A stretch of 64,000 nt of DNA from Ascidiella aspersa. Lineage: Eukaryota. Below are positions 94 to 33,000 of the stretch, piece after piece (the first letter of the stretch is position 1; each line of letters starts with the position of its first letter). A program made the translations under genes and the position numbers. The notes below the pieces were generated by a model. The model saw only the letters and a list, made by a program, of their open reading frames with translations. It was not told where the DNA came from and ran no database searches. The stretch is taken from assembly GCA_963924565.1 (NCBI GenBank), contig OZ004608.1:35898001-35962000 (forward strand), written 5' to 3'.

Positions 94-3000
94 CTTCTTC
101 CACTTTGTAGTTTTGTGAAGGTGCACAATCGTCTGCCGGTGGGCACGTTTTATAGTCCGGTGGTGGTGTTTGGCCTGCCTCATCGGATGCGAGTAATGTT
201 GCGGCTTCGGTAGGTGAATAAATTATTGGAAGTGTATCTTCCTCAGGTGTTTGACATTCGTCTTCATCAAAATGTTTCTCTTCTGTGCTCAACGAAAATA
301 AGTGGTATTTAAAAAAATAAACTACCTATCATGATTAACCTTAGTGGAAAAGTTTAGTAGGGGAAAGTAAGTTTTATGAAATTAATTTGAATTTCGGTTT
401 ATTAGAACTAAGATTTCTACCTGTATGTGAATCAGCTAAATTCATAACTGAACTGTAAACGTCTAATGCATTGACCTACTGAAAAAATGATATCAACCCG
501 TATCACATAAATTCAACGAAGTTATTGTATACGAGCTCAACTGTATCGCTGTAACCAGCTACTGTAATTAATTCAGCAAGGCGACTTAGTTGTAAATGGT
601 GGGCCGTGAAAAGGTTACTATCTGAACAAATGATGTACCTTTTGTGTTCTGTCGCGAAGTTGTATTACTGGAAGGATCTTTGGTCAACAATGGATAAAGT
701 TTCGGTAGTGAGGTTTGGCCCATCTCGATTGTTGGGAGAATATGACGAGAATCATGGTCATATTCAGCTGAGAACTGTGTCCTATCTTCTAATGTGGTGG
801 TTTCAGTAGGTGAAGGAGTTTTTAGCTGGAGTTTATTTTCTTTGGGTATATATGATGTACCTGTTACTTTTGTGTTCTGTCGCGAGGTTTTATTACTGGA
901 TGGATCTTTGGTCGATAATGGACCAAGTTCAATTTTTGATCCTCGTTCTTCATCTTCACATGAAATTCCTCTTTCTGTACGACAAGATTAAACACCAACG
1001 ATAGAGAGTTATCTGATTTTAAGCCCTAATTTCGAATGGGATGAAACAAATTTACTCGACAACACTTACGACACCAAAAAAATATTTTCACAGTAATTGT
1101 AAGACAGGGTTTAGATAATCTAGTAATTGAGTAAACAATAAACATACATGTTTACGGAATATAGTTAATCAATTGTCACACAGTATATTTTAACCAGGTA
1201 AATTAAAAAAATAATCATCAATAAAATCGACATCTAGGTTCATTAAGACTTTTGGTATTCATTGCCATGTACAGTATTAATAGAAAGAAAATAATCTTAC
1301 TTTTTAAACATTTCAATAGATGTTTTCGGACGAAGCACATCACTAGCCCCACTGAAACGATAAGTAGTAAAATGATGGGCAATATAAACCATGGAATTCT
1401 GTGTTCATCTGTTAATAAAACAAAGACGTTTTAATAGAGTGCATTAAATGTTTTAACAATACCTAATACGCTTTATAAAACTTCTATTTATACTGTGAAG
1501 TGATGTAAAAGAGAAAATGTTACCTACCAAATTGGTAAAAAGGCCACCTTTTGGGCTTGGAGTCAATGGCCCCCATGTTTGTCAAAATCAGTTTTATAAA
1601 TGCCAATATTTTGAAGAAAATACAAATTTCTTATGCTTTCAATGCGTCATATGTTTTAATTAAAGTTTTGCCAATTTGAACAAAAAATGCAATTAGTATC
1701 AATTTTGGTATTTTCATTTGGTCTCACTGATGTGAAATCGTTTAATACCGATTTGCTTTTTGTATGATGTCTATTTTATACGTGAGAGGAAACAAGGCAC
1801 AGGACAATTCCCGAAGGGCAGAAAGCTTAAGAACCACTGGTTTACAAACATTTAGCTTCCCTGACAGAAGTTACCTTCTAATATACCGTTATAACTCAAT
1901 TTCTTAGTTGCAATTAGTTTAGACAGATATCGTGTGCCGAACGTGCAATATAACAAAAATGTTCACATCATTTTTATTTTATCCGAATTTTAGTTCCAGG
2001 TCACAAATTAAACCATTGAATTTGAGTGTTTCATAAATAGTTCACTTCATGGCTTAAGTATATCAGAAGATGCTTGGGTCGCAAAATTTGACCATTATTA
2101 AGTCGTGTTAAAAAAGGTTGCGAACCACTGGTCTTTTGGAGCAGGTGTTGGTTTTGGTAAAATTCTGTTCTTTATAGTTTTAACAAACTACTTGGCAAAC
2201 GCGAGCATGTTTGTAGTTTTTAATCCATTTCCTTGATTTAAATTTCAATAATACAGTGTTTTCTCGGTAGTTCACTATATTTAACCGCAAACCCGGAGGT
2301 AAGGATATAGTTGAGACAAAAGTTCTTCCGGGAATTAAACGTATGGCAGGTGGGGCAAGTAGTAAAAAATAAACCCTCGAGTTAAAAAATATTTTTTTAT
2401 GCAAATGACATTGTAATGCATATTGGGTATAGGTTTGGTTTTGTATGGATATATTACACAGAACTTATTAGCTATTTCTCTTTTTCAATTTAAAGACAAT
2501 CAGACTATAAAACGCTTTTTAGTGACACCATTAACATGAGCTCTATTTACAAACCTTGTGTTGCTTCAATTGTGATTTCAAATAATTCGCTGAAGGAACT
2601 TTGACCAAACTCGTTGCCAACTGCAACTTTAACTTGGTACAAAGTTGCATTTTCGATTTTCGAGATCTGTAAAATATGTTTAGTTAGAAAATTAGAGCAG
2701 AGTGAAAAGCAAACAATAATATAACCAAAAAGTGACCAAAGTTTGGTGGATCTATAACAAATATGTATGCTTTTTTAATTTTTAAAGAAAATAACACGAT
2801 TCTTTTGGAAAAGCAGATATCCTTAAAACCAATCTAGTTAGAGGTCAAAATTGTTAAATTGTTACCGCGAAATTGGTGTTACAATATAAATCTAACTAAC
2901 ATTAAAAAGATATTTATCCTAAAAGCGTAAAAAACGGGGGATAAAAAATGGAGCCTAGAAAGAAAAACGAGAAACAATGTGTTGGTGACTTAATAACTTA

Positions 3001-6000
3001 ATAACTATAAACGTCGTTGAATATGCCGGATCTCTAAGCAGTTTATTCTTTAAAATGTCGCATACCTATATACATATTGCGTTCAGACATATTCTTTAGA
3101 TATATTTTGGACATATATTTATTGTTATATATTACTCAAGTTTTTACAGTAATCAAGGATGATGTAGCAGACGAATGGGTTTCGTTCCACTCGGAACAAA
3201 CGTTTCCGTCATCCGCCGTTGCATTGTAGCAAAACCGATACTTGACAATATAAATCACTTTGGATGATCCATAGTATTTGGTCGGGTAGGTCTGAAATTA
3301 AAAAAAAATTACTTGAGATGAAAACAACGCACAAGATGAAAAAAACAGTTGATTTGTTAGGTTAAGCATTGACATCTGCTAACAATCTGTATGTAACCTT
3401 TAAAATACTTACATTCCAAGTCATCAATATATTTCCATCGTTCAACGTTGCATTGACACCAGATGGCGCTAAAGAAGGAGCTACAACAACAACAAAAATA
3501 TTTACAATTCATAGTTGTACAACACTTCCAGATAGTTATAATGCGTGGGCAATTCTTACCTATACATTATGCAACATGAATTAGCTGAACAAATTAATGT
3601 TAGTTTAAATACGTAGTGCTTGTTATGTGAACTAGTCAGGGGTGGACGAGTAACTTTTGTTTCAGATATAGTCACAAACCTTATGACGTAACTATTGGAA
3701 CATACTATCACTTAAGTCGATTATATAAAAGTGCGTAGAAACATGTTTGTGTTCAGTTAAACTTTCTGCGAATTCGACAAAAAAACTTTTATCTACAATT
3801 TTGTGGATTTGCACTTTTCTTACTTATTTTGTTGATCTTAAGAGGCTCCTGCAAATGTTGGTAAGTATAAAGACAGAATAACTGAATAACCCTTACATAA
3901 ATGGAAACAAAGAGAGCAACGGAAAAAATGCTCAGTCCTGCTTAGATTAGCAAAATGTCGCGCTACTCAAGCGGATAAAACTGATAATTAGGGCGATTAT
4001 TTTTTAAACTTGTCAAAAAAAGTTAAAATTTTGTCAAAATTTATGCGTTAGGTCAGAATTTTTTTGTAAATTAGTTAAAGACCAAATAGAATAAAAATTG
4101 ACATATATCGTTTTTAAAAAAAAGTAAGATAAAAGTATAGTCACCTTTTTGAAATAGTCGTTCAGTTAAAAAAAAAATTTAGTTATATTCAACGACATTT
4201 TAACATTATTGGTACACGCGAGCTGCCAGAATTAACCACCCAGTTCTAATTTACCGCATTAGGTTCAGCTTTAACTTCGTTTTTCATCATATAGTTTTTA
4301 TCTCTATAAATGTATTGCTCTTTTTTGGTTGTGATTTGCAATTATCCCATTTCCCATTTCGATAACTAGGTCTTTGTTCACTTTCTGCAATTGTTTTTGC
4401 GTTGTATTTTAACTGTTTACAACACATTTTTCTAAAATAACCAGCGTCTTGTTTTTCTTATGCATTTTTATAGTTGTCTGTATTTTTAAAATGACAAAAA
4501 TATCATCTAAGCATTTTTATGAGTTTTTTTCCGAAAAACATAAATAATTTGCGTTTGACCGGGGTCAGTAAAACAACAAAAACGTGTGATTGACGACGCC
4601 AAAACACTAATGCAGTGCTTCAAAAAAAAATATGCTGTTTAAATCAATGATTTTGTAATGGTTAAAATTTTGTCAACAAAAATATATTTTTAGGTCAAAT
4701 AAGTCAAAATTTCTCATTTTTTAACTCAAAAAATATTCGCCTACTGATAAGTAAACTTACAACCTACCTCCTCCCAATGTCTTTCGTGGTTTGCTTATTT
4801 CACTCGCCTTGCTCATTCCATATTTATTGATGGAATATACTCGGTAAACGTATTCGATGTATGGAAGCAAGTTTGAAGCATAACAAGGCTTGTTGACGTC
4901 ACAATCGAAAGTAAACCAATTATCTTCTTGTTCCAAACGCCCTTCCACCTTATATTGAATGACGTCTGACGATTGGTTGTCCCACGTCAGATGCTGTGAC
5001 GTGGCGCTCGAATTGATGACGTCAACATGAATCGGGAATGTAGGGAGGTCTACATTATAATTTATACGAGTTTAACGAAACCCAAATTTAGAATTTTCTC
5101 GTGGTAACAAATCACAAAACAATAAAACTCTTGATTGTCTGCCTAATGAACGCAGATGTTTAACAACATGTAAGAATAAGGTGTTTAAGTTAAACAGAAC
5201 TTAATAATATATTTCTTCGTCTATAACATTAATATGTTTTTTTTAGATGCCTTATCAGCACTTGTTAAATATTGGAAGAAGCTAACGCACATACACAACG
5301 CCTTACGAACAATGACATATGAAGCGACATATATTTAAACAACGTGTGTGTTTACCAGCTATAGATAGGTGTGTTGTAGCACAGTTCTCATCGAAGTTTG
5401 AGGAAGTACAACATTTGTAAGCACCAGCTTGGTCATCCCCTACTTCTTTTAACTGCAAACCAAAAGTCACATTTTCGTAAGCTTGATTCGCAATGAAAAA
5501 CTATTGTTCTCCTTCTTTGGTATTTTATTTTATTTAATTAAGGAACGCTCCTAGTGGCCGCCTTAGCCTCCAACAGAAACGTGTCTCGGTCCTAATTTCT
5601 GACCTGATTTTGTTCGTGGTAATAGCAACTTCTGTTGGTATGCAAGTTTTGTGAGCACTATTTAGGCCATATAGTTCTTGAATAAGAAACGAAGTTATTG
5701 CAAATTGCAATCATCAATTATGTTTATTAACTTCTAACTGATTTCAGTAGCCAACAACTTAAAATATTATTATAAACGATGTATGTTTTACCTGAAGAGT
5801 ACCATTTACATGATCATAATCTACAACATCAGTTTCAATTCCGCCAACAAAATGAGTCCAACTCCATTTTGTCTCAAGTCGTTCATCGTGTGTTTCGTTG
5901 CATTGTAAAGTTTGATTTTGTCCTCGTAATACTTCAATTTTGTCTTTAACTGCTACACCAACAGTGGGTTCTAAATCAACGTAAAATCAAAAACGATGAA

Positions 6001-9000
6001 ATTTAATCACGACAGATGACTGTGTTACAACATTTCAACTGAAAACTACTCAATTATGTCACTACTGCTTGACAAGAAATGTGACCATCGCATTTCATAT
6101 AGAAAACGTTATTTTACCATAAACCACAAATTGTGTAGATTCAGTAATTGATCCTTTATTGTTTGTTGCCGTACAACTATACGTCCCCTCATCGGATTTA
6201 GAAGTACTTTGAATCAACAATGATCCCTCGGTTAGTGATCCTTTGCTTGATATTCTGTAAAAATAAAAAATAAAAATAAAACCAGCTTTTGCTACATACC
6301 ATATTAGTAGGCTGAATAAAATTTCGTTTATTTAATTCGTAATTAATTAATTTATTTACAATGTCGAACACAAAACAAAACAAAAAAACTGCATCATCAC
6401 AACGTCAGTACAACGATGAATGCAAAAAATCAATATTGAGTATAATAAGGAAAAAAATCTATATATATTTGTTTGATCTAAAATTAAATATATAAAATCT
6501 CTTATACTTACTTAAGATTGCTTGTCATGTTAACGCCATCTTTCATCCAATAAATACGTGGTCTTGGGTATCCTTCAACTGTACAATTCAATATAATGGT
6601 CCTAAAATTGTAAAACAACATCAGTTTAAAACGTTAAGCATAAAACCATCCCGGAGGTTAGTTGTTTAGTCCAGTTAAGCTACTGTAAGTTAATATATTG
6701 GCCTATTTAACAACATTACTCCACTTCGAAAAGACATATTTTTTGGAACTATTTGTCCTCTGTTGCTTTGCTTGCTCGTTGAAATAAAGCACCTAATAAA
6801 GCGTCAATTTTACCTTGAATTCACAAATCGGTGCTGGTCTAGAATCCTACCACAAGAAACATTATTTGGGTTAGGGTGCTGGTTAGCGTTTGGGTTAGGG
6901 TGGGTCAAGTATTATTATTAAATAAAAACATAATAACACTTGACCCACCCACACCCAAATGCTAACCAACACCCCAACTCAAATTTTGTGCGTTGATTTC
7001 ATAGCTGTGGTAGGATTCTAGACCAGCGACCTCAAATAAAATATTAAACCCTTAACTTACTTGTTTTTCAGGGATTCTACTTGATCAAAGCCGGTCGCAA
7101 AACGAGGTGAAAGTTCTATGAAAAAAAAGGAAAACAATTTATGACTTCACCACAAATTAAAAAAGAAATTGGAAAAAATTCAAAGCTCATTTGCCTTTAA
7201 TTCTAAGCTTGGCATTTGAAGTCAAACTTTCAAGTGGATTTTCGGCAACACATTGATATATTGCCACGTCATCTTCAACAACTTCCGTAATCGTCATTAC
7301 ACTTCCGTCTTCTGTTCCCACGCTCGCACTCACACGTGACGTCATCTCAATAGGAGCTTCATTTTTAAGCCACTTATAAGTTGGCTGAGGAATACCTGAA
7401 GCTTTGCAGCGGAATGTCGCAGTTTCGTGAAAATCGACGTTTTGAGAAAATATTCTTCGTTTAAGAAACAGGGGTTCTGAAAGTATTTTGAAATAGCCTT
7501 GAATTTTGAGAAATTGAATTTATACGGATGTACTAAGAGCTTATAGTGACTGGGTCGGGACTTATGCATCTATAACAGATTAGGGCTAAAGTGCCAGCCT
7601 CGCTAGGTTGCCATGTTACGCGGTGATAAATCTTGATTGTTTATTAAATGTTTGGCCTACCTTCATGGCAGTAGTTTATTCAGTGCTCAATGCCCGTGTG
7701 TACTAAATACCAGTAGTGAGCAAATCATTTGCAAAACGAAACAATTTTCTAAGCTTAAATATATAGTTATTCTGCGCGTTGTGTGGCATTTATTGTTGTT
7801 GTAAAGCCAAATTCATTTTCAAACAGCTGATAAGAATACCTGAAACGATTACTTCCCCTTGTGCTGTCATAGAACCCTGTTTATTGCTGGCCGTACATCG
7901 GTAGGTACCAGTGACGTCATGTGTGACGTCATGGATTTCAAGTTGTCCCGCTTCGGTGATGACGTGATTAGAGGGAAGGGATCCGTTTATTTTTGTCCAC
8001 TTGAGGGTTGAAGTTGGACTGAAAAAAGATTTTCGTAAAAGTCGGTATAGTTAAATCTTATGAACTGATCGAACAGAAAAACAAAGTTGAAATCTTAATC
8101 TTTTAATAAAAGAAATTAAGTTTTGCTACTAGTTTATTCTTACTTGTAATATGTTTGAAATAATATTAGGTAGTGCTTGGTTTATAGTTGGGACCAATTT
8201 ACTAATTTAATTATTTTACAATTTTGTGAAGACTAAAAACGAAAATACTGGGGTGATTCTTTGATGTGATTTTAAGTTTAACAAAAAAGCCTACTTACTT
8301 TCCACCAGCGAAGCACTCAAGCATGACTGATGAACCCACTTTAGCATACGTCACATTCTTCGGTTTCAAGAGCATTGTTGGAGGATTAAGTTTGTCTAAG
8401 TTAATAAAAAGACAACAAACATAAACAACAATAAGGTCAATTAGGTTAACTACAACATCCGTACTCACCAGACTTCGATACTTTTAGGTCGATATAATGC
8501 GATGACTTTTCGATTCGACGACCGCTCGGCAAATTCCACTTATCACGAATGAAGCAGAAATATTTATCAGTTAGGTCTGTTGTGGGATTGGCAAAGTAGA
8601 GGGTTCCGTTTTGCGACACGTAATAATCAGCTCTTCCAGGTTTTCCATAGATAATAAAAGCATTAATAGATTCCCAGAAAAAGTACACCGAGTTGTCTGT
8701 AAAATAAACGTGGTTGTAATGTTCACTGGAAATAGGAAACTGCTGAAAACTTCAAAACGGATAAAACGAACATTATTAGTTCATTGAAGTTAAAAACAAC
8801 TGTACTTTATAACATGTAACTTACCAGGAGCAAAGTTGGCTGTTTCACATGAAATAGCAATTCCTTTACCAGCTTCTGTGCTGTATGAAGTTTTACTTAG
8901 AGGTCCAAAATCATTTATAACTGAAAATATATTGGGATATTTTTAATGTTTTTTTGCTGTAGCAGTGGTTTGTAACAAAGAGTTTGAACAAAATTTAAAT

Positions 9001-12000
9001 TACTTCAAAAACAAGATTCATTCCTCAATTACGTGTACATTTATGTAAATGTATATCTTTTTTAACTGTAACGGTTTGTTCACACTTCCCTCGCTTCCAA
9101 CCGAAAGCTTTAAAGTTGAAATATTTTAACTTTCCGCAACCGATGTGCCGACGTTTATCGAATAACACGTCTAGTGCTAACTAACCTTAACGCTAAAAAT
9201 TAAATATTAACAGACAACTTTTTTAAGTTTTGCCTTGGCAAAATTAAGTGTTTAAATATTATGGCCAAGGCTATCTACCGCAGCATGTTCCCAAACAATA
9301 TGAAAAGCTACTCCTGGCTGATCGTATATGTAGGAGAAATGCAAATCAGTTATTTTGTACCCATGTCCTTTGGTAGCAGCTTTGTTATAAACTTACAAGT
9401 GATCTCAAGTTTTCCTTGATTGCTTAAAGCTGTTCCTTCATCACTTGTTGCCAGGCACTGGTAATTCCCCCCATCTGATACTCGCAGTGGATTTATCGTC
9501 AGTGAGCCATTCTTGCTGATCTTGTACCTCTCTGTATTTGTTAAACAGTGCGTTATCAAAAGCACATAATATAGGAAAAACATTTTTTTACAGTAAATCA
9601 TCATATGAAAACACACAAGATGTCTTCAGAGAGGCTTACAGAAACCAGTCATTCTGATCAGTATTGTAGTACAAGAAAGGCCAGGCTAGAATAACAACAA
9701 CTATTATGCGGTGAGGATCGAACTCACGACCTTTATCACACCTGACTCTACGAAAGCACATTTTTTATTATATAATGTTTGCCGTTATAGTTGGCCAGTA
9801 TAACCCCAGAAGGGCTATGGTCACAGAATACACATTGTTTATATGCATGTTTCAGTTGCTAAAAACAACAAATAAATATTAAGCATATTTTGATTAAAGA
9901 GTTACATCCCAGGAAAATGTAATTACTTTGTCCGTCATACATCAAAATCATGACAAAACTCAACACGTAGTAAAGACCATACAAAAGTAGATATCATTTT
10001 AAGCGTTTCGAATACCTCTTTGGTAATTTTCAAAATCAATTCTGTATAGGCTATGATATTCTTACTACGTCTTACTAAAACCTTCAACATTTATGCTCCA
10101 AAAACTTAACAGTAACAAAAAAATTTAATATTTCTTTTTGGTCATACCTGAGTTGTTTGCTAAAATATAAAAACTAAACGGTTTTGCAATTGATGATGAA
10201 AACAGCGGACTCTTAAAAAACGAAAAGTCCAACAGAGTTTAAAATAACAATTAAAAGCCGATGGTGCAAATATGCTGAACCCAACTGTCGTGACGCGTTG
10301 TCAAATCTGTAAAATGTTGCTAATAAAGAAGCAGCGACTTTTAGGACTCACCATTTGTAATTATTTTGTGACCATCTTTTATCCACGTGGTACTTTGTTT
10401 TAATAAGTTTGTTTCACATTGAAATGTTACTTGCTTCGTTCCATCAAAGAGTCTAACATATTGATCAGTTGGTTCACGTAAAAATACATTATCTAAGGAA
10501 ACAAATATGTTTTATAATACGTCTTATATTTTATGACTGGTCTATTTTTACGATTACAAACAAATGATGCAACTTAACCTTTTAGACTTAGTTTTGCATT
10601 TGAATACAATTGCCCGACAATATTTTCAGCCACACATTGATATATTGCCACGTCATCGTCACCAACTTCCGCAATCGTCATCACACTTCCGCCTTCCGTT
10701 CCCACGCCAATATTCACACGTGACGTCGTTTCAATAGGAGCTCCATTTTTTAACCATGTGTAGTTTAATGCAGATAAACTTGTAGCCTTACAATAAAACG
10801 TTGTTGTTTCACCGTACTGGACAATTTGCGAGGAGATGTTCGTGACCCAAGTTGGTTTATCTAAAAACAAACATCTAGTGTAAACGGCACTTTTTAATTA
10901 TAAATTGTAATTATCTACAAATAACCGGGTGGCATTTAAAGTCTAAACAAAATCAGGTAGTCGACAAGAAATGCTTGCAAACAAGATTTGACCTGCATAG
11001 CTTAGTTGGTAGATCAAATAAGTCCTAAATTATTGGGAATAAGGTCTAAATCAGGGTTCGGCAACCCCTGGCCATAGGCGTAGCCAGAATTTATAAATAT
11101 TTTCAAAATTTATAAATATTTTACTCTTAATAATTTGTTATGTAGCATTTATGAGCAGTACCACAACATTTGATCACAGGCATGCCACACATTTAATTGT
11201 CATGCATTGGTACGTCACAAACGATGTAGTTAATATTACGTTTGCTATACATTAATGTACTTTTACTACTTTTAGACGGTTTTTCCTCTTTGAATGTTTT
11301 TTGAGTATTGCGTTAACACTAAGTCAGTTGCTGCTCGAAACGGTTTGCTAGCATTGTTATTTGTGTTCGTTATGGCAGTTAATACAATGACAAAAGCTAA
11401 ACAAAAAATTCCAACTTTTTGGCCCCACTAAAAATTTTCGGCTGGCTACGCCACTGTCCCTGACACGCGTGCCACTTGTGGCTTTTTTGCATGGCACGCC
11501 AATTGATTTAACGCGCACGTTATATCACCTTAAGAAAGTGCAACCACTACATTACTAACACTAGGGCTAACTAAATGGTTGCACACATTGGCAGTTCGTG
11601 TCACAAATAAGTGTCTTAACTGTGTTGTATTTAATGTTATTTTTTGTGGGCGTTATACTTGTTGTTTACTATTAACCGTTCCTATTACGTCACAATGCCC
11701 CAAATTTGGCGTAACGTTTACTACGTTAAAGCAGGGCATTCTACATCAGTGGTTCTCAACCGCCGGTCTGCGTCAACTTTTCTGCCGGTCCGCCAAAATT
11801 TATATCTCAATTGTAAAAAGCAAGATGTTGGAGGCGGCTTGTCCATCAAATTTAGAACTTAGCAGCCAGTTCCGTAATTTGCAACATTGTGACGTAACAT
11901 AGAGTTAATGGTCTATTTCGGACTTTATCGTACGTCACAATGGTCCAAGTGTTGTGCCCAACTATTTAAAAGTAGGCTACAACTTGTTCAAGTCTTAAAC

Positions 12001-15000
12001 TTTAAGACAAGTTGTACGTGAAAAACTTCAAGGGAAACACGTATGATATCAAAAAGACAGCAGCAAATTTCTCATTACATTGAAGTTTTCGTTATTTGCT
12101 TTTAAGTTGCATACTTTTGTCATAATTACATTTTGGGTTGAATTTAATTTTTAAAGGTCCACCGGTCCGCAAAAATTGTTTTAAAATTTTCCCGGTCCGT
12201 AAGTTAAAAAGGTTGAGAACCACTGTTCTACATTAAAAATAAGCACGTGTGTTTTTGTACGACTGAGAAACCAACAAAAAGCGAAACTGATAGTTAACAC
12301 TTAGGTTTAACACCAAGGTATCGGCTTAAAAGCATTGAAATATATTTCAAAAAAGATACGTAAACTATATGTCAGATCACAGCATGCATGCAGGGCTGCT
12401 GAGTCGGACTCGGGACTCGAGTAAGACCAGGTAAACCTACCCGAGTCCGACGAGTGCGGCATGCGCAGTACTAAACTTCATAACTGATAAGGCAGCAAAC
12501 TGTAAATTGTTAAGGAGGAATAGCATATGCTCGTGGCGTATTTTCCATGACCCTATGAGTGGATTGCGGAATATCCACCTTAATTTAGTGACGTAAATTG
12601 ATGAAATACAGGCTGTAGAGTCGAAGTCGGACTCGGGACGAGATGAACTCTTATATTCGGCCGAAGTTAGATTCGGGTTTGTTTTTAATCATGTCCGCAA
12701 ACCTGATTGCCAGTGCAAAACCAAACATAGAAAAATGTTTAGCACGCGAGTTGTTATATTTTGACATTATTCATAAACTGGCACACTGCGTACGAAAGGT
12801 TGAGAGGTTATGGGATAATCGGGTCCATCGGTTTGGCATCGGCCGTTATGGTTATCGGCCGTACATTTGGACGCTCTAGTCTGACCTGCGCTAGGGCGCC
12901 GCTGTTTTGGCACTGGATTTTGGTCCTGTTTGTGGTTTTTGGTGGTAATGGGTGGGGTTAGAAAATCGGTTAGTGTTGAAATTATTAGGGAAGTTTGTGG
13001 TGGGGTTTGGGGTTAGTTAAAGTGTTGTCTAGGCCAGATTCTGACCTTACGCCTTATTTAGGATTTAGGATTATTCCGATTTGACGGTACTAATACAATT
13101 GGGTATTAGTCCTATTTTGGCCTTATTCCGAAATTGTGTTTCATTCTGACGTTGGTGTTGTTCTTATATCCGTCTTATGGTTGGAGTCCCGTTTAAGCAG
13201 CCTATGCTAACTCTTTATCGGCCGGTTTGGGAACCTAGTAAGGCTGCACGGAGTTCTAACGACAGAAATGACTTATCGTTGGTTAATGCCAATTTTAAAA
13301 CATGCAAGTTTTTGGCCGCTATATTAGTTCCAAGTTATTAGTAATTAACTTTACTGAATGAAATTTTGATGAAAACAATATTGGCAGGCGTAGTGAGTAC
13401 CAAAGTACACACCGCGCATTGTGACGTAATAACTAGAAACTGTTTACTCCAATCAAAACGTTGACTCGCTTGCGAAAAATACATAAACTGTTTATACTTG
13501 AAAGTTGGCTCTTCCCATAACTTGCATCAAAATGCATAACGAAATATCACACCCGACTGAATTGTAAGTTTCGAAGACAAATTCTAAAATCCCCCTTCGG
13601 GGTGAATTTAAATATTTAAATAAAATTGATTGCCTGAAAAACAAGTATATCATGTTGGCCTGACCAGGTTTGTCACAAAAACATATGCTAACTGGTAAGT
13701 TCACCTGTTATCTCCAGTCTAACACTTGATGTCGCACTCCCAAGCTTGTTTTTAGCCTCACACTCGTAAACTCCAGCCATATCTACTGTGACGTAATAAA
13801 CCACAAGTTGACCCGCGCTCGTGATCACGTGACTTAAAGGAAGTTGACCATTAACTTTTCTCCAAAAGATGTTTGGCGTTGGGCTGAAATCGTGAATATA
13901 AACACTATAACATTTCAAAATTATGACCTTATTTGGGCAGTATTTTTGACATTTTATACGTTACAACATTATTTAATTAATTTTCATCACTCGTATAAGC
14001 TACACTTACTTTCCACTGGCAAAACATTCTAAAGTTATGGTTTCACCGACATGAACATAGGTGGTTGATTTTGGCTGCAACATCATTACTGGCGCATGTT
14101 GTTGTTCTGAAAAACAGAAAGGCTGTATGAGGTACATATTTCTTTAATAAGAATTTTCAACACATCATATTTTATTTACTTTCTCCAGTTACACTAAGAA
14201 CGATTTCCGATGAATTGTGTTCCCTGTAAATATCAAAGTATGGCTCCTTTCCAGTAACGTAGCAAGTATATACGTTCGAGTCAGCCTTTGTTGGGTTGGA
14301 GAGATAAAGAGCTCCGTCAGTTTGCGACACATAGTACTCGGGTGTACCCGGTGAACCAAGTTGGTTGCGGTTTTCTTCCTTCTCCCAAAAGTAATCGACC
14401 GAGTTTTCTAAATCAAATACGATTTAATGGTTTAAAGGATCTTTATTGTATGCTATAAAAATAATAGATTTGCTCTTACCTGGCGAAAAGTTAGCTCCGT
14501 CGCACGTTAGTTTCACACCAATACCTTGATTAGTCGTAACACGTGAGCGAGTTTTGCCTTTAAAAGGTCTAAAGTCTAAACAGAGAAAATAGACACAAAA
14601 GAAAACAACATAACGCTGGGCAAATATGCAGGATTGCTTGATTTTCTACCAGGCGACGCGTTAAGCACATTTTTACCAGTAATCTAAAAATGTGCCTTTG
14701 TAAACTATCACTTATCGGTATATTTTTACCTATCCGTACATATAATATAATAACAGCTGGTGAAAACGCTAGCTTTGAAAAAAGCACAAAAACTTTGAAT
14801 AGCTCGTAAAACGGTACAATTGGTTTGATTTTGTTATATGCAAATTAAATCACTTACATTTTGTCTCAAGAAATGCCACATTGCTTAGCGCAGTTCCTTC
14901 ATTATTTGAGGCCAAACATTGATACTTTCCTTCGTCAGAAGCGTTGACTCTTGAAATTATCAAGCTGCCATGTTGGTCCACCAGAAACCTGCTATGTTCT

Positions 15001-16379
15001 ATAATACAAAAACAATTTATACAAAAATCTTCCGTTAAATTTAAATACACATGTGCAATATGAACGAGGATGCTTTGAAGGACCTTTTAGCACAAACTAA
15101 CAACTAAGATTGTAAACAGAAATTAGATCACTTGTTACCTCCAGCTAATATAAATTCTCCATCCTTCTTCCATTGATATTTAGCATTGGTCAAGTTTGCC
15201 TTACATCTTAATGTGACGTCATCAACCACAGCCTCCTCCAAGTCAACAACAGTGACGTGCTTTGGCTCCAGAATGAAGATGTTGGCTGAAACTATAATAA
15301 ATACATTAAATGTTTTTGTAGCTATGGCAATACAATATTGGGAAAGAAGCAAGTAGTTATGGAGTCAACTGTGTTCCGCCTCATATACTCTAAATGACCT
15401 TCTTAACCGTATAACCTTGTCCACGTGACGACAAATTTAAACCGCAAGTTATGACGTCATTGTGTGCAACATTATTTCAAGTCAAAGTCGATTAAAATGC
15501 ACACAAATCGTTTACAAAATACAAAAAAAAAAAAACATTTTGAAACTGTCATTCAGTTGAAATTTTGTCAAAAAAATATAGTTTAGAGTTGTATTCCATG
15601 ACATTTCAATTGTATTTTGTCTTCGTTGGAGCAATAAACGGTATAGACGAGCTTGTAGAATTAGCCACCCTGGCCTAGTTTATCGCGTTATGGGTTGAAC
15701 TCGAACTTCGCTGTTGCTTTATTATTTATCTCCGATTTGGACTGATGTATTGAACAGTATTTGCAGTATTTTTTCGTCTGTGATTTGCAATTATCCCATT
15801 TCCTGTTTCGATCAGTAGGTCGTTGTTAATATTCTAAAACTATTTTACATTGTATAGCAACTGTTTACACAAAATTCTTCGAAAATACCCAGCGTCTTGT
15901 TTGTTTGTCTATTTCAAATAACAAAAAACAACAACTATAAGCATTATTATGGGCTTTGCATAAATTAGAAAAAATAACTAAAACGTGTGGTTGACGACGC
16001 GAAGACACTAATGCAGTACTTTAAACAACAATATGTTGTTCAAATCAATGTTTTTCTAAAAGGTTAAATTTTTGTCAAAAAAATATATTTTTAGGTAAAA
16101 ATTTTTTTCAAGTCAAAATTTCTCATTTTTAAGGTAAAAAAATAATCGTCCTATTATATCATACTACTTCGTTAAAGCTTTTAGCACAAATTTTAGTAAA
16201 ATTGTTTTTGGTCAAATAATGGTATTATGTTGCGGATGTTTAATAAATTTATATTATTTCTATTTGTTTAAACTGACTAGTTATTTCTAAAAAAATAAAA
16301 AAGCAGGCAATTATTTATAACATTCCAGTAAATAGATTATAATACCTGATGCAAAACTGAGAAGAAATACAAGAAACAT
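94..16379 (-). CDS. Copy A: multi-exon contactin/L1-like Ig-superfamily transmembrane protein (SP-10xIg-2xFN3-TM-cytoplasmic tail); 3' end truncated by window edge
   Basis: Hand-spliced exons with consistent phases and no stops: 16346-16379 (MFLVFLLSFAS), 15139-15291, 14858-14998, 14480-14575, 14180-14407, 14010-14106, 13705-13883, 10579-10860, 10352-10492, 9397-9531, 8825-8920, 8469-8696, 8299-8395, 7840-8018, 7195-7476 (GC donor), 7061-7115, 6512-6601, 6118-6254, 5792-5970, 5356-5452, 4768-5049, 3413-3480, 3148-3291, 2555-2666, 1301-1408 (TM), 639-974, 94-282. Ig I-set motifs (W.K.G, D.G.Y.C). Contactin-like segments: FKGKTRSRV..NQGIGVKLTC, YVSQTDGALY, LECFASGNPTP.I.WRKVNG, CNETHDERL, NLLPYIEY.YRV.SIN. 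Confidence 0.88.
1301..1408 (-). CDS. Copy A transmembrane exon (IPWFILPIILLLIVSVGLVMCFV-RKH)
   Basis: Phase 1-1 exon of 108 nt with AG/GTAAG boundaries. ~23 hydrophobic residues followed by basic stop-transfer residues. Absent from the ORF track. Confidence 0.85.
2555..7115 (-). CDS. Copy A Ig9, Ig10 and two FN3 domains (9 exons)
   Basis: Ig9: IILNCTVEGYPRPRIYWMKDG...SDEGTYSCTATN. Ig10: LQCNETHDERL..WSW...DQAGAYKC. FN3-1: HLTW..YKVE..NLLPYIEYVYRVYSIN. FN3-2: APSGV...LMTW..YIVKY..TLYQVKVAVGNEFGQS. Confidence 0.85.
3989..4743. mobile_element. hAT-type non-autonomous element in an intron of copy A
   Basis: Ends TAGGGCGATTATTTTT / AAAAATATTCGCCTA. TSD CTGATAAT/CTGATAAG (7/8). A related diverged copy lies at ~15480-16153. 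Confidence 0.75.
6830..7030. mobile_element. ~200 bp palindromic (fold-back) MITE-like element
   Basis: 22-bp terminal IR GCTGGTCTAGAATCCTACCACA/TGTGGTAGGATTCTAGACCAGC plus an inner IR (GGGTGGGTCAAGT/ACTTGACCCACCC). Further copies at ~29830-30030 and, partially, ~53035-53172. Confidence 0.75.
7195..10492 (-). CDS. Copy A Ig5-Ig8 block (internal duplicate of Ig1-Ig4), 7 exons
   Basis: Exon sizes 141/135/96/228/97/179/282 with the same phases as the first block. Paired motifs: YQCLASNNEGTALSN/YQCLATSDEGTALSN, ANFSP/ANFAP, LECFASGN/LECFAGGN, DDVAIYQCVAEN in both. Confidence 0.88.
10579..15291 (-). CDS. Copy A Ig1-Ig4 block (first horseshoe module), 7 exons
   Basis: Exon sizes 153/141/96/228/97/179/282. 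Four Ig domains, each with a canonical Cys pair and Trp. Confidence 0.88.
11073..11456. mobile_element. hAT-type MITE nested inside the end of another hAT-like element
   Basis: TIR-like ends CATAGGCGTAGCCAG / CTGGCTACGCCACTG. Degenerate 8-bp TSD CCCCTGGC/TCCCTGAC. It interrupts CAGGGTTCGGCAACC...ACGCGTGCC starting at 11052. Confidence 0.7.
11747..12225. mobile_element. hAT (Charlie-like) MITE, copy-A specific
   Basis: Perfect 15-bp TIR CAGTGGTTCTCAACC/GGTTGAGAACCACTG and perfect 8-bp TSD TTCTACAT (11739-11746, 12226-12233). Confidence 0.9.
15480..16153. mobile_element. Diverged partial copy of the 3989-4743 element family in intron 1 (copy B equivalent ~36590-37081, internally deleted)
   Basis: Shares blocks such as GTGATTTGCAATTATCCCATTTCC and AAACGTGTG.TTGACGACGC..A.ACACTAATGCAGT, and the right terminus AATAATCGTCCTA. 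Left boundary is approximate. Confidence 0.6.
16346..16379 (-). CDS. Copy A start/signal-peptide exon (MFLVFLLSFAS + VSA from next exon)
   Basis: ATG lies 5 nt after an acceptor with a TACTAAT branch-like sequence. Hydrophobic stretch. Phase-1 donor G|GTATT joins in frame to exon 15139-15291. Copy B equivalent is 37274-37307. Confidence 0.7.
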
Positions 16380-30000: not shown

Positions 30001-33000
30001 ATAGCTGTGGTAGGATTCTAGACCAGCGCCCTAAAATAAAATATTAAACCCTTAACTTACTTGTTTTTCAGGGATTCTACTTGATCAAAGCCGGTCGCAA
30101 AACGAGGTGAAAGTTCTATGAAAAAAAGGAAAACAATTTATGACTTCACCACAAATTAAAAAAGAAATTGGAAAAAATTCAAAGCTCATTTGCCTTTAAT
30201 TCTAAGCTTGGCATTTGAAGTCAAACTTTCAAGTGGATTTTCGGCAACACATTGATATATTGCCACGTCATCTTCAACAACTTCCGTAATCGTCATTACA
30301 CTTCCGTCTTCTGTTCCCACGCTCGCACTCACACGTGACGTCATCTCAATAGGAGCTTCATTTTTAAGCCACTTATAAGTTGGCTGAGGAATACCTGAAG
30401 CTTTGCAGCGGAATGTCGCAGTTTCGTGAAAATCGACGTTTTGAGAAAATATTCTTCGTTTAAGAAACAGGGGTTCTGAAAGTATTTTGAAATAGCCTTG
30501 AATCTTGGGAAATTGAATTTATACGGATGTACTAAGAGCTTATAGTGAATGGGTTATAGTGAACTTATAGTGACTGGGACTTATGCATCTAGAACAGATT
30601 AGGGCTAAACTGCCAGCCTCGCTAGGTTGCCATGTTACGTGGTGATAAATGTTGATTGTTGATTAAATGTTTGGCCTACCTTCATGGCAGTAGTTTATTC
30701 AGTGCTCAATGCCCATGTGTACTAAATACCAGTAGTGAGCAAATCATTTGCAAAACGAAACAATTTTCTAAACTTAAATATAGTTATTCTTCGCGTTACG
30801 CGGCATTTACTGTTGTTGTAAATTCCACTGTATAATTCCACTGCCCCTTGTGTTGTTATAGAACCCTGTTCATTACTGGCTGTGCATCGGTAGGTACCAG
30901 TGACGTCATGTATGACGTCAGGGAGTTCAAGTTGTCCTGCATCAGTGATCACGTGATTAGAGGGAAGGGATCCGTTGATTTTTGTCCACTTGAGGGTTGG
31001 ATTTGGACTGAAAAAAGATTTTCGTAAAAGTCGGTATAGTTAAATCTTATGAATTGATCGAACAGAAAAACAAAGTTGAAATCTTAATCTTTTAATAAAA
31101 GCGAAACCCATAATTTAAGTTTTGCTACTAGTTTATTCTTACTTGTAATATGTTTGAAATAATATTAGGTAGTGCTTGGTTTATAGTTGGGACCAATTTA
31201 CTAATTTAATTATTTTACAATTTTGTGAAGACTAAAAACGCAAATACTGGGGTGATTCTTTGATGTGATTTTAAGTTTAACAAGAAAGCCTGCTTACTTT
31301 CCACCAGCGAAGCACTCAAGCATGACTGATGAACCCACTTTAGCATACGTCACATTCTTCGGTTTCAAGAGCATTGTTGGAGGATTAAGTTTGTCTAAGT
31401 TAATAAAAAGACAACAAACATAAACAACAATAAGGTCAATTAGGTTAACTACAACATCCGTACTCACCAGACTTCGTTACTTTTAGGTCGATATAATGCG
31501 ATGACTTTTCGATTCGACGACCACTCGGCAAATTCCACTTATCACGAATGAAGCAGAAATATTTATCAGTTAGGTCTGTTGTGGGATTTGCAAAGTAGAG
31601 GGTTCCGTTTTGCGACACGTAATAATCAGCTCTTCCAGGTTTTCCATTGATAATAAAAGCATTAATAGATTCCCAGAAAAAGTACACCGAGTTGTCTGTA
31701 AAATAAACGTGGTTGTAATGTTCACTGGAAATAGGAAACTGCTGAAAACTTCAAAACGGATAAAACGAACATTATTAGTTCATTGAAGTTAAAAACAACT
31801 GTACTTTATAACATGTAACTTACCAGGAGCAAAGTTGGCTGTTTCACATGAAATAGCAATTCCTTTACCAACTTCTACGCTGTATGAAGTTTTACTTCGA
31901 GGTCCAAAATCATTTACAACTGAAAATATATTGGGATATTTTTAATGTTTTTTTCTGTAGCAGTGGTTTGCAACAAAGAGTTTGAATAAAATTTAAATTA
32001 CTTCAAAAACAAGATTCATTCCTCAATTACGCGTACATTTATATAAATGTATATCTTTTTTACCTGTAACGGGTTTGTTCACACTTCCCTCGCTTCTAAC
32101 CGAAAGCTTTAAAGTTGAAATATTTTAACTTTCCGCAACCGAAAGCGTTTTTTACGCTCTATGTACCGACGTTTATCGCATAACACGTCTAGTGCTAACT
32201 AACCTTAACGTTAAAAATTAAATATTAACAGACAACTTTTTTAAGTTTTGCCTTAGTAAAATTAAGTGTTTAAATATTATGGCCAAGGCTGTCTACCGCA
32301 GCATATTCCCAAACAATATGAAAAGCTACTCCTGGCTGATCGTATATGTAGGAGAAATGCAAATCAGTTTTTTTGTACCCGTATCTTTTGGTAGCAGCTT
32401 TGTTCTGTACTTACAAGTGATTTCAAGTTTTGCAGAGTTGCTCAAAGCTGTTCCTTCATCACTCGTTGCCAGGCACTGGTAATTTCCCCCATCTGATACT
32501 CGTAGTGAATTTATCGTCAGTGAACCATTCTTGCTGTTCTTGTACCTCTCTGTATTTGTTAAACAGAGCGTTATCAAAAGCACATAATATAGAAAAACAT
32601 TTTTTTACAGTAAATCATCATATGAAAACACACAGGATGTCTTCAGGGAGGCTTACAGAAACCAGTCATTCTGATCAGTATTGTAGTACAAGAAAGGCCA
32701 GTCTAGAAAAACAACTATTCTGCGGTGAGGATCAAACTCACGACCTCTGTCACACCTGACTCTACGAAAGCATATTTTTTATTCTATAATGTTTGCCGTT
32801 AGAGTTGGCCAGTACAACCCCAGAAGAGCTTGGTCACATAATACACATTGTGTATATGCATGGTTCAGTTGCTAAAAACAACAAATAAATATTAAGCATA
32901 TTTTGATTAAAGAGTTACATCCCAGGAAAATGTAATTACTTTGTCCGTCATACATCAAGAATCATGACAAAACTTCAACACGTAGTCAAGCCCATACAAA

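What the first reader, a model, noticed from the sequence alone, without database searches (positions are those of the whole stretch)
7195..15291. Exact internal duplication of the Ig1-Ig4 horseshoe module (7-exon cassette x2)
Seen: exon sizes 153/141/96/228/97/179/282 are repeated as 141/135/96/228/97/179/282 with identical intron phases and paired motifs. The duplication stops exactly at the Ig4 boundary, after which Ig5/Ig6-like domains resume. Established: Ig1-4 fold as one horseshoe unit (Ig1:Ig4, Ig2:Ig3) that carries the binding surface in contactin-2, L1, Dscam and hemolin. Inference: each molecule may present two independent binding modules, or use the second as a spacer. The large amino-acid divergence between the modules implies the event is much older than the A/B duplication.
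Basis: partly seen in the sequence, partly recalled or inferred. Interest (0 to 1): 0.8.

Follow-up and report, generated by a model that had tools for sequence, protein, structure and literature searches.

The report
Doubled horseshoe cassette in contactin-like receptor
A probable sea-squirt gene for a contactin-like membrane receptor carries the seven exons of its four-domain 'horseshoe' binding head twice in a row, and its roughly 25 neighbouring sister genes carry one, two or three such cassettes, so the whole head is copied and deleted as a unit.

Summary
On the minus strand, 14 open exons of 153/141/96/228/97/179/282 and 141/135/96/228/97/179/282 nt sit at the stated places. Their intron phases are identical. 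Twenty-seven of the 28 splice sites are AG or GT; the E14 donor is GC. Each exon matches its n+7 partner best (z 10-51; 46.7% amino-acid identity overall). DNA similarity is confined to the exons.

E4 matches contactin Ig2 position-specifically, E6 and E13 match Ig3, and E7 and E14 match Ig4. The cassette borders are all phase 1, so cassette number can change without breaking the frame.

The gene belongs to a tandem family of at least 25 loci on the same chromosome. Members carry two cassettes, three cassettes (one gene, 21 exons) or one. Seven one-cassette genes share a single deletion junction, from mid-E2 to intron 8. Three others have a hybrid E7/E14 exon. Both kinds therefore descend from multi-cassette genes by unequal recombination, and the duplication predates the family radiation.

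Both cassettes show dN/dS below 1.

Three things remain untested: whether both cassettes enter one mRNA (RNA coverage was too thin), whether they fold as two horseshoes, and what the receptor does. The scan had already noted this same stretch (s1-801610), not other DNA.

The parts
16346..16379 (-). Leader exon: ATG plus 11 hydrophobic codons (MFLVFLLSFAS), ending in phase 1 with a GT donor
   Evidence: Sequence read. The region is conserved in a paralog (79% over window 16364-16299). Phase.
15139..15291 (-). E1, 153 nt, first half of Ig1 of cassette 1
   Evidence: E1-type exons open 24 family loci.
14858..14998 (-). E2, 141 nt, second half of Ig1
   Evidence: I-set, E 6e-7. Pairs with E9 at z 24.2.
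14480..14575 (-). E3, 96 nt, first half of Ig2
   Evidence: Pairs with E10 at z 10.0.
14180..14407 (-). E4, 228 nt, second half of Ig2
   Evidence: Best solved-structure matches are contactin-2 residues 136-189, which is Ig2. Pairs with E11 at z 13.8.
14010..14106 (-). E5, 97 nt, first half of Ig3, ends in phase 2
   Evidence: Pairs with E12 at z 20.8.
13705..13883 (-). E6, 179 nt, second half of Ig3
   Evidence: Matches contactin-1/-2 residues about 244-306, which is Ig3. Pairs with E13 at z 33.5.
10579..10860 (-). E7, 282 nt, whole Ig4 of cassette 1; followed by an 86-nt intron
   Evidence: I-set, E 4e-15. Matches contactin-5/-4/-2 residues about 295-389, which is Ig4. Junction sequence read.
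10352..10492 (-). E8, 141 nt, first half of Ig5 (Ig1 of cassette 2)
   Evidence: (z 10.9 with E1). E8-type exons are found only in the multi-cassette genes and, more distantly, in the chromosome-5 gene.
9397..9531 (-). E9, 135 nt, second half of Ig5
8825..8920 (-). E10, 96 nt, first half of Ig6
8469..8696 (-). E11, 228 nt, second half of Ig6
   Evidence: Sixteen copies at 73% identity or more in the genome. No solved-structure match on its own.
8299..8395 (-). E12, 97 nt, first half of Ig7
7840..8018 (-). E13, 179 nt, second half of Ig7
   Evidence: Matches contactin-2 residues 244-300, which is Ig3.
7195..7476 (-). E14, 282 nt, whole Ig8 (Ig4 of cassette 2); GC donor
   Evidence: I-set, E 1e-16. 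Matches contactin-5/-4/-2 Ig4. Donor.
7061..7115 (-). 55-nt exon for the first strand of Ig9 (phase 1 in, phase 2 out); restores the frame between E14 and the next exon
   Evidence: the only open candidate with a pyrimidine-rich AG acceptor and a GTAAGT donor. It lies in the 85%-conserved stretch seen.
6110..6609 (-). Two further exons of Ig9 (about 6609-6511 and about 6250-6110)
   Evidence: Pfam Ig_3/I-set hits. Conserved in paralogs directly after their last Ig4 exon.
5351..5974 (-). Two exons of Ig10 (about 5974-5795 and about 5491-5351)
   Evidence: (weak I-set hit).
4760..5071 (-). Fibronectin type III exon
   Evidence: Pfam fn3, E 2.5e-8.
1221..1430 (-). Transmembrane segment (ILPIILLLIVSVGLVMCFV) followed by basic residues
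   Evidence: mean Kyte-Doolittle hydropathy 3.06 over 19 residues.
30195..36400 (-). The same 14 exons in the second tandem gene copy
   Evidence: 93-97% DNA identity; per-exon coordinates.

Best explanation
The region encodes the ectodomain of a type I membrane receptor related to contactins. An old in-frame tandem duplication doubled the 7-exon cassette for the four N-terminal Ig domains, the unit that folds as a horseshoe in contactins, L1, Dscam and hemolin. The predicted order is: leader, Ig1-4, Ig1'-4', two more Ig domains, at least one FN3 domain, a transmembrane helix and a tail.

Every cassette border (leader to E1, E7 to E8, E14 to the next exon) is a phase-1 intron. A cassette can therefore be added or removed without breaking the frame. 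The chromosome shows that this has happened repeatedly. The gene sits in a tandem family of at least 25 loci with one, two or three cassettes. These were made by unequal homologous recombination between homologous exons or introns of the cassettes.

What is shown:
- the exon anatomy and the pairing of the two cassettes
- the position-specific likeness of E4, E6/E13 and E7/E14 to contactin Ig2, Ig3 and Ig4
- that the two-cassette state is older than the family radiation
- that the one-cassette members examined are derived
- that both cassettes are kept open and under constraint

What is inferred:
- that both cassettes are spliced into one mRNA
- that each folds as its own horseshoe
- that the family serves cell-surface recognition, with cassette number setting the number of binding heads or the reach of the distal one
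For: Anatomy and pairing:
- Searches give the exons, phases, pairing and exon-only DNA similarity.
- E4 matches contactin Ig2, E6 and E13 match Ig3, and E7 and E14 match Ig4, with contactins as top or near-top hits.
- The E7-E8 intron is 86 nt with strong sites (ttccttag| and |gtgagt) and no spacer coding sequence. This favours plain constitutive splicing.

Constraint:
- Between the two gene copies, dN/dS is 0.47 for cassette 1 and 0.35 for cassette 2.
- Both cassettes stay open with conserved splice sites in paralogs whose introns no longer align.

Family:
- E11-type, Ig4-type, E8-type and E1-type exons map to at least 25 loci on C2 35.37-36.72 Mb, plus one on C5.
- L045 holds 21 colinear exons, which is three cassettes.
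- Trees of the Ig3b and Ig4 exons split into a cassette-1 side and a cassette-2 side (99/97 and 90/96).

Direction of change:
- Seven one-cassette genes share one junction. E1, intron 1 and the first ~97-108 nt of E2 are joined to intron 8 about 226-239 nt past E8 (window ~14902/14891 joined to ~10126/10113). They descend from one deletion in a two-cassette gene.
- Three other one-cassette genes have an Ig4 exon that is E7-like for about 240 nt and E14-like at its end. Their flanks match intron 6 upstream (95.5%) and the sequence after E14 downstream (85.6%).

Membrane anchoring.

Expression: sparse RNA reads lie on E7, E12-E14 and the Ig9/Ig10 exons, all in the orientation expected for a minus-strand RNA in a stranded library.
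Against: - No read or contig shows the E7-E8 junction. Joint use of both cassettes in one mRNA is therefore inferred, not seen.
- The few RNA reads cannot be assigned among the near-identical paralogs.
- E14 has a non-canonical GC donor.
- No two-horseshoe structure was predicted, because the exons were not joined.
- No homologue from another species was obtained, so the age of the duplication in species terms is unknown.
- Some exons (E12, E14, Ig9a) show zero differences among three paralogs, while E4 and E6 differ more than the flanking introns. Gene conversion therefore blurs both the dN/dS values and the trees.
- The function is unsupported by any experiment.
Confidence: 0.8

Rival explanations
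1. The two cassettes are used alternatively. Each transcript carries either Ig1-4 or Ig1'-4' (leader to E1...E7 to the 55-nt exon, or leader to E8...E14), so each protein has one horseshoe, chosen from two diverged versions.
For: All cassette borders are phase 1, so either choice stays in frame. One-cassette paralogs of both types exist with open exons, so single-horseshoe proteins are viable in this family. RNA data did not show the E7-E8 junction.
Against: The E7-E8 intron is only 86 nt with good sites, and seven well-formed exons would have to be skipped as a block. No conserved intronic elements of the kind used for mutually exclusive choice were found, although the only check was DNA similarity between the cassettes. 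The absence of junction reads reflects about 1x depth or less, not a negative result.
Confidence: 0.12
2. The two-cassette gene did not arise by duplication inside one gene. It arose by fusion of two neighbouring paralogs that had already diverged, through unequal crossover between the intron after Ig4 of one and the intron before Ig1 of the next. On this view the 47% identity reflects divergence before the fusion.
For: Unequal crossover between paralogs is demonstrably active here. The chromosome-5 relative appears to have an E8-like first Ig exon followed by cassette-2-type exons only. It could represent a free-standing 'type 2' gene.
Against: All seven chromosome-2 'type 2' genes tested are deletion products of a two-cassette gene, with an E2 relic and a shared junction. 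All three 'type 1' single genes carry hybrid Ig4 exons. No chromosome-2 gene examined looks like a primary one-cassette ancestor of either type. The canonical-looking contactin-like gene in the cluster is about equally distant from both cassettes (31-44%). Without an outgroup species the two routes cannot be fully separated.
Confidence: 0.15
3. One cassette is a decaying remnant that is never or rarely included, so the duplication has no functional consequence.
For: dN/dS of 0.35-0.47 is relaxed compared with typical housekeeping genes. In cassette 1, dN (0.074) is close to the local intron divergence.
Against: All 14 exons are open, and 27 of their 28 splice sites are AG or GT (E14 has a GC donor), in this gene. 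The homologous exons are open in the second copy, apart from the end of its E13. Homologous exons are also open at 55-96% amino-acid identity in paralogs whose introns are unalignable, including the three-cassette gene. Elevated synonymous change in E4 and E6 points to exchange between paralogs, not to decay.
Confidence: 0.05
4. The duplication is an assembly artefact.
For: None specific. The genome is rich in near-identical tandem copies.
Against: The cassettes are only 61-72% identical in DNA, and only in exons, so they cannot be a collapsed or doubled read pile. Independent DNA runs cover all 30 bins of the 5001-10990 stretch that was laid, which spans E7 through cassette 2. The same arrangement recurs in at least five loci.
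Confidence: 0.01

Closest known systems
Contactins (CNTN1-6, axonin-1/TAG-1)
   Same: Contactins are the best solved-structure matches for every informative exon. The matches are position-specific: E4 to Ig2, E6 and E13 to Ig3, E7 and E14 to Ig4. The general order is the same: Ig1-4 head, two more Ig domains, then FN3. A more contactin-like single-horseshoe gene with the same exon plan lies inside the cluster.
   Different: There are ten Ig domains, with the head present twice, instead of six. A transmembrane segment and a long tail replace the GPI anchor. The gene belongs to a tandem family of at least 25 loci with variable cassette number.
L1 family (L1CAM, neurofascin, NrCAM, CHL1, neuroglian)
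   Same: A type I membrane protein with an Ig1-4 head, further Ig domains, FN3, a transmembrane segment and a tail. Neurofascin appears among the matches.
   Different: L1-family matches are weaker than contactin matches. No FIGQY-like ankyrin-binding motif occurs in any open segment of the tail region. There are ten Ig domains, not six. A review reports a single L1 in tunicates (PMC10084454), whereas this is a large family.
Dscam
   Same: A many-Ig receptor whose Ig1-4 form a horseshoe. Its diversity arises by duplicating exons or genes.
   Different: Dscam diversifies by mutually exclusive single exons or by whole-gene duplication, not by repeating the whole four-domain head. Its order is 9 Ig, 4 FN3, Ig, 2 FN3, which is not seen here. 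Sequence matches are weaker than to contactins.
Hemolin
   Same: A free-standing Ig1-4 horseshoe. This shows that the four-domain unit can act as a self-contained module. There are weak matches to E2 and Ig9b.
   Different: Hemolin is a secreted insect protein of four Ig domains only, with no tandem repeat of the unit.

Membership tests
Immunoglobulin I-set domain proteins (Pfam PF07679) | Domains that score above the Pfam gathering threshold for I-set | tested here: met
   E7 scores 56.2 bits and E14 60.7 bits against a cut-off of 23.7. E2, E6, E13 and Ig9b are also over the cut-off as half-domains.
Contactin family | N-terminal Ig1-Ig4 unit with position-specific sequence likeness to contactin Ig1-4 | tested here: met
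   E4 matches Ig2, E6 and E13 match Ig3, and E7 and E14 match Ig4 of contactin-1/-2/-4/-5, with E-values from 1e-6 to 8e-31. The Ig1 halves are not position-specific.
Contactin family | Six Ig domains followed by four FN3 domains | tested here: not met
   Ten Ig domains are encoded. Only one FN3 exon was recognised by Pfam. Further FN3 exons are likely but were not resolved exon by exon.
Contactin family | GPI anchor, with no transmembrane segment or cytoplasmic domain | tested here: not met
   A 19-residue stretch of mean hydropathy 3.06 is followed by RK-rich residues and further open coding segments, in both copies.
L1 family | Six Ig, three to five FN3, one transmembrane segment | tested here: inconclusive
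   The transmembrane segment is present. The Ig number is ten, not six. The FN3 number is unresolved.
L1 family | Cytoplasmic ankyrin-binding FIGQY-type motif | tested here: not met
   No [FY]IG.Y occurs in any open minus-strand segment of 60 aa or more in the tail regions of either copy. The tail of copy 1 is cut by the window start.
Horseshoe-forming Ig1-4 modules (structural class) | Ig1 packs on Ig4 and Ig2 on Ig3 after a turn in the Ig2-Ig3 linker | not tested
This needs a fold of the joined exons. Only sequence likeness to proteins with solved horseshoes is available.
Dscam family | Order of 9 Ig, 4 FN3, Ig, 2 FN3, and clusters of mutually exclusive Ig half-exons | tested here: not met
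   FN3 follows the tenth Ig domain, and no Ig exon was seen after the FN3 exon. Repeats are whole 7-exon cassettes in series, not arrays of one exon.

The most novel reading that the evidence does not exclude
The four-Ig horseshoe behaves here as a copy-number-variable building block. A lineage-specific receptor family would tune the number of independent binding heads (one, two or three per molecule), or the reach of the distal head, by adding and deleting whole cassettes through unequal recombination. The family would serve self/non-self or immune recognition rather than neural adhesion. Tandem horseshoes in one polypeptide would also be a new ectodomain geometry for IgCAMs.
Probability: 0.25. 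Interest if true: 0.75.

Novelty: new variant of a known kind. Interest (0 to 1): 0.58.

Why it matters
The Ig1-4 horseshoe is the binding head of contactins, L1, Dscam, sidekicks and hemolin, and it is normally present once per chain. Here nature has repeated it two and three times, and has also cut it back to one, within a single gene family.

This has three uses:
- It gives a ready-made series for asking whether the horseshoe is an autonomous folding and binding module, and how head number and distance from the membrane affect adhesion.
- It is a clean example of exon-phase symmetry (1-1 cassettes) enabling modular gain and loss by unequal recombination, with the breakpoints still readable.
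- If the host is a tunicate, as the evidence suggests, a family of at least 25 such receptors with diverging distal domains is a candidate recognition system in the closest invertebrate relatives of vertebrates. A review records only a single L1 in tunicates (PMC10084454).

Tried and rejected
- The exhaustive HMMER search with the single Ig4 exon E7 returned only giant multi-Ig proteins ranked by summed domain scores. Re-scoring those 150 with all 14 exons found no colinear relative. It gave no orthologue.
- The word search with E7 found no candidate within its length window of 51-163 aa. This says nothing about full-length relatives.
- A full-length search, a self-dotplot of the protein and a two-horseshoe structure prediction all need the exons joined. 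Everything was done exon by exon.
- RNA reads of the one RNA run of the species (X3) were laid on window 5001-10990. Depth on the cassette exons was about 1x or less (5.9 in the Ig10a bin), and no junction reached the listing threshold. The tandem-versus-exclusive question therefore stays open. The two DNA runs only showed that the stretch is covered.
Architecture was instead pieced together from exon hits and 54 short loci, so gene counts are lower bounds and some loci are only partly seen. One example is the 22-kb gap between the E8-type exon at C2:36248669 and the E10-type exon at C2:36270738.
- Solved-structure searches with the short second halves of Ig1 and Ig9 were not position-specific, and E11 alone matched nothing.
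- Literature searches for a tandem or double horseshoe, or for an expanded contactin-like family in ascidians, found nothing relevant. The library is partial, so this is weak evidence of novelty.
- An assembly artefact and a decaying cassette were considered and rejected (see rivals).

Full report
**What is in the sequence**

The gene lies on the minus strand.

- Cassette 1: E1 15291-15139, E2 14998-14858, E3 14575-14480, E4 14407-14180, E5 14106-14010, E6 13883-13705, E7 10860-10579.
- Cassette 2: E8 10492-10352, E9 9531-9397, E10 8920-8825, E11 8696-8469, E12 8395-8299, E13 8018-7840, E14 7476-7195.

A short leader exon (16379-16346; ATG plus MFLVFLLSFAS) ends in phase 1. In both cassettes the internal phases are 1,1,1,1,2,1, and both outer borders are phase 1.

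All acceptors follow pyrimidine runs, and donors are GT(A/G)AGT-like. The exception is E14, which has a GC donor (AAG|GCAAAT). Four other paralogs share that GC donor; the rest of the family has GT there.

The E7-E8 intron is 86 nt, and the coding sequence runs ...KLSLK / NVFLREP... with one split codon and no spacer.

After E14 the frame is carried by a 55-nt exon (7115-7061) with a strong acceptor and a GTAAGT donor. It encodes a first-strand-like peptide. Next come two exons completing Ig9, two exons of Ig10, an FN3 exon (Pfam fn3, E 2.5e-8), further exons, a strongly hydrophobic transmembrane segment (1430-1221) and a tail.

**Is the repeat real?**

Yes. Each exon peptide of cassette 1 was scored against each exon peptide of cassette 2, with 200 shuffles per cell. 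The cognate pair is the best cell in every row and column, with z = 10.9, 24.2, 10.0, 13.8, 20.8, 33.5 and 51.2. Identity is 46.7% over 375 aligned residues, highest for the Ig4 exons at 60.9%.

At the DNA level the similarity is colinear, restricted to exons and 61-72%. The introns no longer align.

Pfam sees Ig families in ten of the fourteen exons taken singly. E7 and E14 are complete I-set domains.

Solved structures give position-specific matches, and contactins are at or near the top of each list:

| Exon | Best match |
|---|---|
| E4 | contactin-2 residues 136-189 (Ig2) |
| E6, E13 | contactin-1/-2 residues about 244-306 (Ig3) |
| E7, E14 | contactin-5/-4/-2 residues about 295-389 (Ig4) |

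The short second halves of Ig1 and Ig9 are not position-specific, and E11 alone matches nothing.

The protein self-dotplot and the two-horseshoe fold both need a joined model.

**The second copy**

A second gene copy at about 16.5-37.4 kb is 93-97% identical in DNA, introns included. It has the same fourteen exons.

Summing Nei-Gojobori counts exon by exon between the two copies gives dN/dS of 0.47 for cassette 1 and 0.35 for cassette 2. Divergence is patchy. E12, E14 and Ig9a have no differences at all among three paralogs, whereas E4 and E6 differ more than their flanking introns at synonymous sites too. This points to sequence exchange between paralogs. These ratios are therefore rough.

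**The family context, which changes the picture**

The window is C2:35,898,001-35,962,000 of a 308.6-Mb assembly. Exon-wise searches of that genome place the following in a 1.35-Mb stretch of C2 (35.37-36.72 Mb), plus one locus on C5:

- 16 E11-type exons at 73% identity or more
- about 30 Ig4-type exons
- 24 E1-type exons
- 9 E8-type exons

Mapping all exon types on 45 short loci and on targeted stretches shows four architectures.

1. **Two cassettes.** These are this gene, its copy, and the genes at 35.80 and 36.65 Mb. A diverged gene at 36.00 Mb and a gene at 36.25 Mb each show an E7-type exon followed by an E8-type exon. The 36.25-Mb gene has a 22-kb gap before its next cassette-2 exon, and it remains unresolved.
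2. **Three cassettes.** L045 (C2:36,703,165-36,712,881) holds 21 colinear exons on one strand: E1-E7, then E8-E13 plus an Ig4 exon, then E8-E14.
3. **'Type 2' one-cassette genes** (at least 10). These consist of an E1-type exon followed by E9-E14-type exons.
4. **'Type 1' one-cassette genes** (35.885, 36.458 and 36.593 Mb). In the 35.885-Mb gene, E1- and E4-type exons and an Ig4 exon are followed directly by the Ig9 exons, FN3 and the transmembrane segment (L043). For the other two, the short loci show the Ig4 exon running directly into the Ig9 and Ig10 exons.

Trees of the Ig3b and Ig4 exons separate a cassette-1 side from a cassette-2 side (99/97 and 90/96 support). Members of diverged paralogs fall on both sides. 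The duplication therefore predates the radiation of the family.

**Direction of change**

In seven type-2 genes (M1, M3, M5, M6, M7, P5, P8) the DNA between the E1-type and E9-type exons aligns in two parts.

- The first part aligns at 75-80% to this gene's E1, intron 1 and the first 97-108 nt of E2, ending at window 14902 or 14891.
- After about 12-25 unaligned bases, the second part aligns to intron 8, starting at window 10126 or 10113 and running on into E9.

All seven carry the same relic of E2 and the same junction. They therefore descend from a single ~4.8-kb deletion in a two-cassette ancestor. That deletion removed the end of E2, E3-E7, E8 and the start of intron 8, and left E1 to splice in phase to E9.

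The three type-1 genes have an Ig4 exon that is E7-like for about 240 nt and E14-like at its 3' end (...ENPLGSLISNAVLRIK). In L043 the upstream flank matches this gene's intron 6 at 95.5%, including a 2.3-kb insertion. The downstream flank matches the sequence after E14 at 85.6%. The two alignments overlap by about 130 nt inside the exon. That is the signature of unequal crossover between E7 of one gene and E14 of another.

Cassette number is thus being changed by non-allelic homologous recombination. The highly conserved core of the Ig4 exons (GGSVMTI.EV..DDVAIYQCVAEN) provides one of the crossover sites.

The C5 gene seems to start with an E8-like exon and shows no E1/E2 relic. It could be a third kind of deletion product or a free-standing type-2 gene. 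This keeps open the rival that the first two-cassette gene arose by fusion of diverged neighbours.

A more contactin-like gene sits inside the cluster (L053/L054). It has the same exon plan but one cassette, and is 31-44% identical to either cassette. Its Ig4 exon scores higher against contactin-2 (114 bits) than E7 (73) or E14 (88). This fits an origin of the family from a contactin-type gene.

**Expression**

One RNA run of the same species label was available. About 6% of it was read. The reads fell as follows:

- on E7, E12, E13 and E14, and on the Ig9 and Ig10 exons
- none on the introns, apart from a repeat
- all in the orientation expected for a minus-strand RNA

Depth was about 1x or less on the cassette exons, with 5.9 in the Ig10a bin. 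Depth falls towards the 5' end, and no junction reached the listing threshold. Reads at 5844-5958 carry fixed differences, so they probably come from a paralog.

Transcription of family members is therefore likely. Whether E7 is spliced to E8 is not shown.

**What it most likely is and does**

The product is a type I membrane receptor of the contactin/L1 kind whose binding head is present twice. I commit to both cassettes being included in one mRNA (about 0.8 given the gene is expressed), for three reasons:

- the 86-nt intron with good splice sites
- the long-term conservation of both cassettes
- the existence of a three-cassette relative

Each cassette then most likely forms its own horseshoe. 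Cassette 1 is the more variable and membrane-distal one. Cassette 2 would act as a second head or as a rigid stalk. This step is inference.

The family's size, tandem arrangement, recombination and non-L1 tail suggest lineage-specific cell-surface recognition. No FIGQY motif is present. One SAYDII ITIM-like motif sits in an open segment of copy 2. The function is untested.

**Host**

Earlier notes of the scan call this a sea-squirt genome. I tested this only by finding a cellulose-synthase-family match over Pfam's cut-off in a 647-codon open frame (C5:19,610,700). To my knowledge, tunicates are the only animals with cellulose synthase, so this fits a tunicate. A review states that tunicates have a single L1 (PMC10084454), so this family would be an undescribed expansion.

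**Comparison and novelty**

The protein is not a member of the contactin family by architecture: it has ten Ig domains and a transmembrane anchor. It is not a member of the L1 family by tail motif. By sequence it is closest to contactins.

Repeating single Ig domains is commonplace. I found no description of a repeated whole Ig1-4 head, or of a family varying in head number. The library is partial, and no cross-species search of full-length proteins was possible here.

I rate it a new variant of a known kind, with interest 0.58.

The scan had already flagged this same stretch as a 'double-horseshoe' cluster (s1-801610).

Noticed in passing
window 6826-7030: A ~200-bp element with terminal inverted repeats (ggtgctggtctagaatcctaccaca ... 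tgtggtaggattctagaccagc) and a palindromic interior lies in the intron after the 55-nt exon. DNA runs pile up on it at more than 200,000-fold word depth, and RNA reads hit it on both strands. It is probably a very abundant MITE.
   Followed up: partly
window 7193-7194 (donor of E14): The last exon of cassette 2 has a GC donor (AAG|GCAAAT). The same is true of four paralogs (copy 2, and the genes at C2:35800998, 35629955 and 35684313). All other family members have GT.
   Followed up: partly
L045, C2:36703165-36712881 (+): A paralog with three horseshoe cassettes in series (21 exons, 12 Ig domains before the Ig9-type exons). The Ig3b and Ig4 exons of its middle cassette group with cassette 1, while its other exons look like cassette 2.
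   Followed up: partly
L023/L041, C2:36026228-36030671 (-): An irregular paralog. E6- and E7-type exons are followed by Ig9-type exons, then another Ig4-type exon, then Ig9-type exons again. This looks like a different unit of duplication, Ig4 plus Ig5.
   Followed up: no
L015 C2:36248309-36248803 and L020 C2:36656119-36656613 (+): In two paralogs the E7-type and E8-type exons lie in one open frame of 185-187 codons, separated by exactly 81 nt. The inter-cassette intron could be read through there as a 27-residue linker.
   Followed up: no
window 11017-13329: A ~2.3-kb insertion in the E6-E7 intron is absent from the second copy in the window. It is shared at 95.5% with the one-cassette neighbour just left of the window (L043). 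That neighbour's 5' half is therefore this gene's closest relative.
   Followed up: partly
window 7195-7476, 8299-8395, 6511-6609 versus 30195-30473, 31300-31392, 29513-29611: E14, E12 and Ig9a are identical between the two copies even at synonymous sites. E14 and E12 are also identical in protein in the 35.80-Mb gene. E4 and E6 differ by 17-25% in protein. This patchiness suggests gene conversion.
   Followed up: partly
L053/L054, C2:36186001-36199500 (-): A single-horseshoe, more contactin-like gene with the same exon plan lies inside the cluster. It may be the canonical contactin and the source of the family.
   Followed up: partly
window 21630-21647 (-): An ITIM-like SAYDII motif lies in a 143-codon open segment of the second copy's tail region. 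The tail also has repeated acidic and Tyr-containing units. Exon status was not verified.
   Followed up: no
G000 C5:19610700-19611167 (+): A cellulose-synthase family (PF03552) match over the curated cut-off lies in a 647-codon open frame. This is consistent with a tunicate genome.
   Followed up: no
window 30839-31006: The E13-type exon of the second copy aligns only over residues 1-56 of 59.
   Followed up: no
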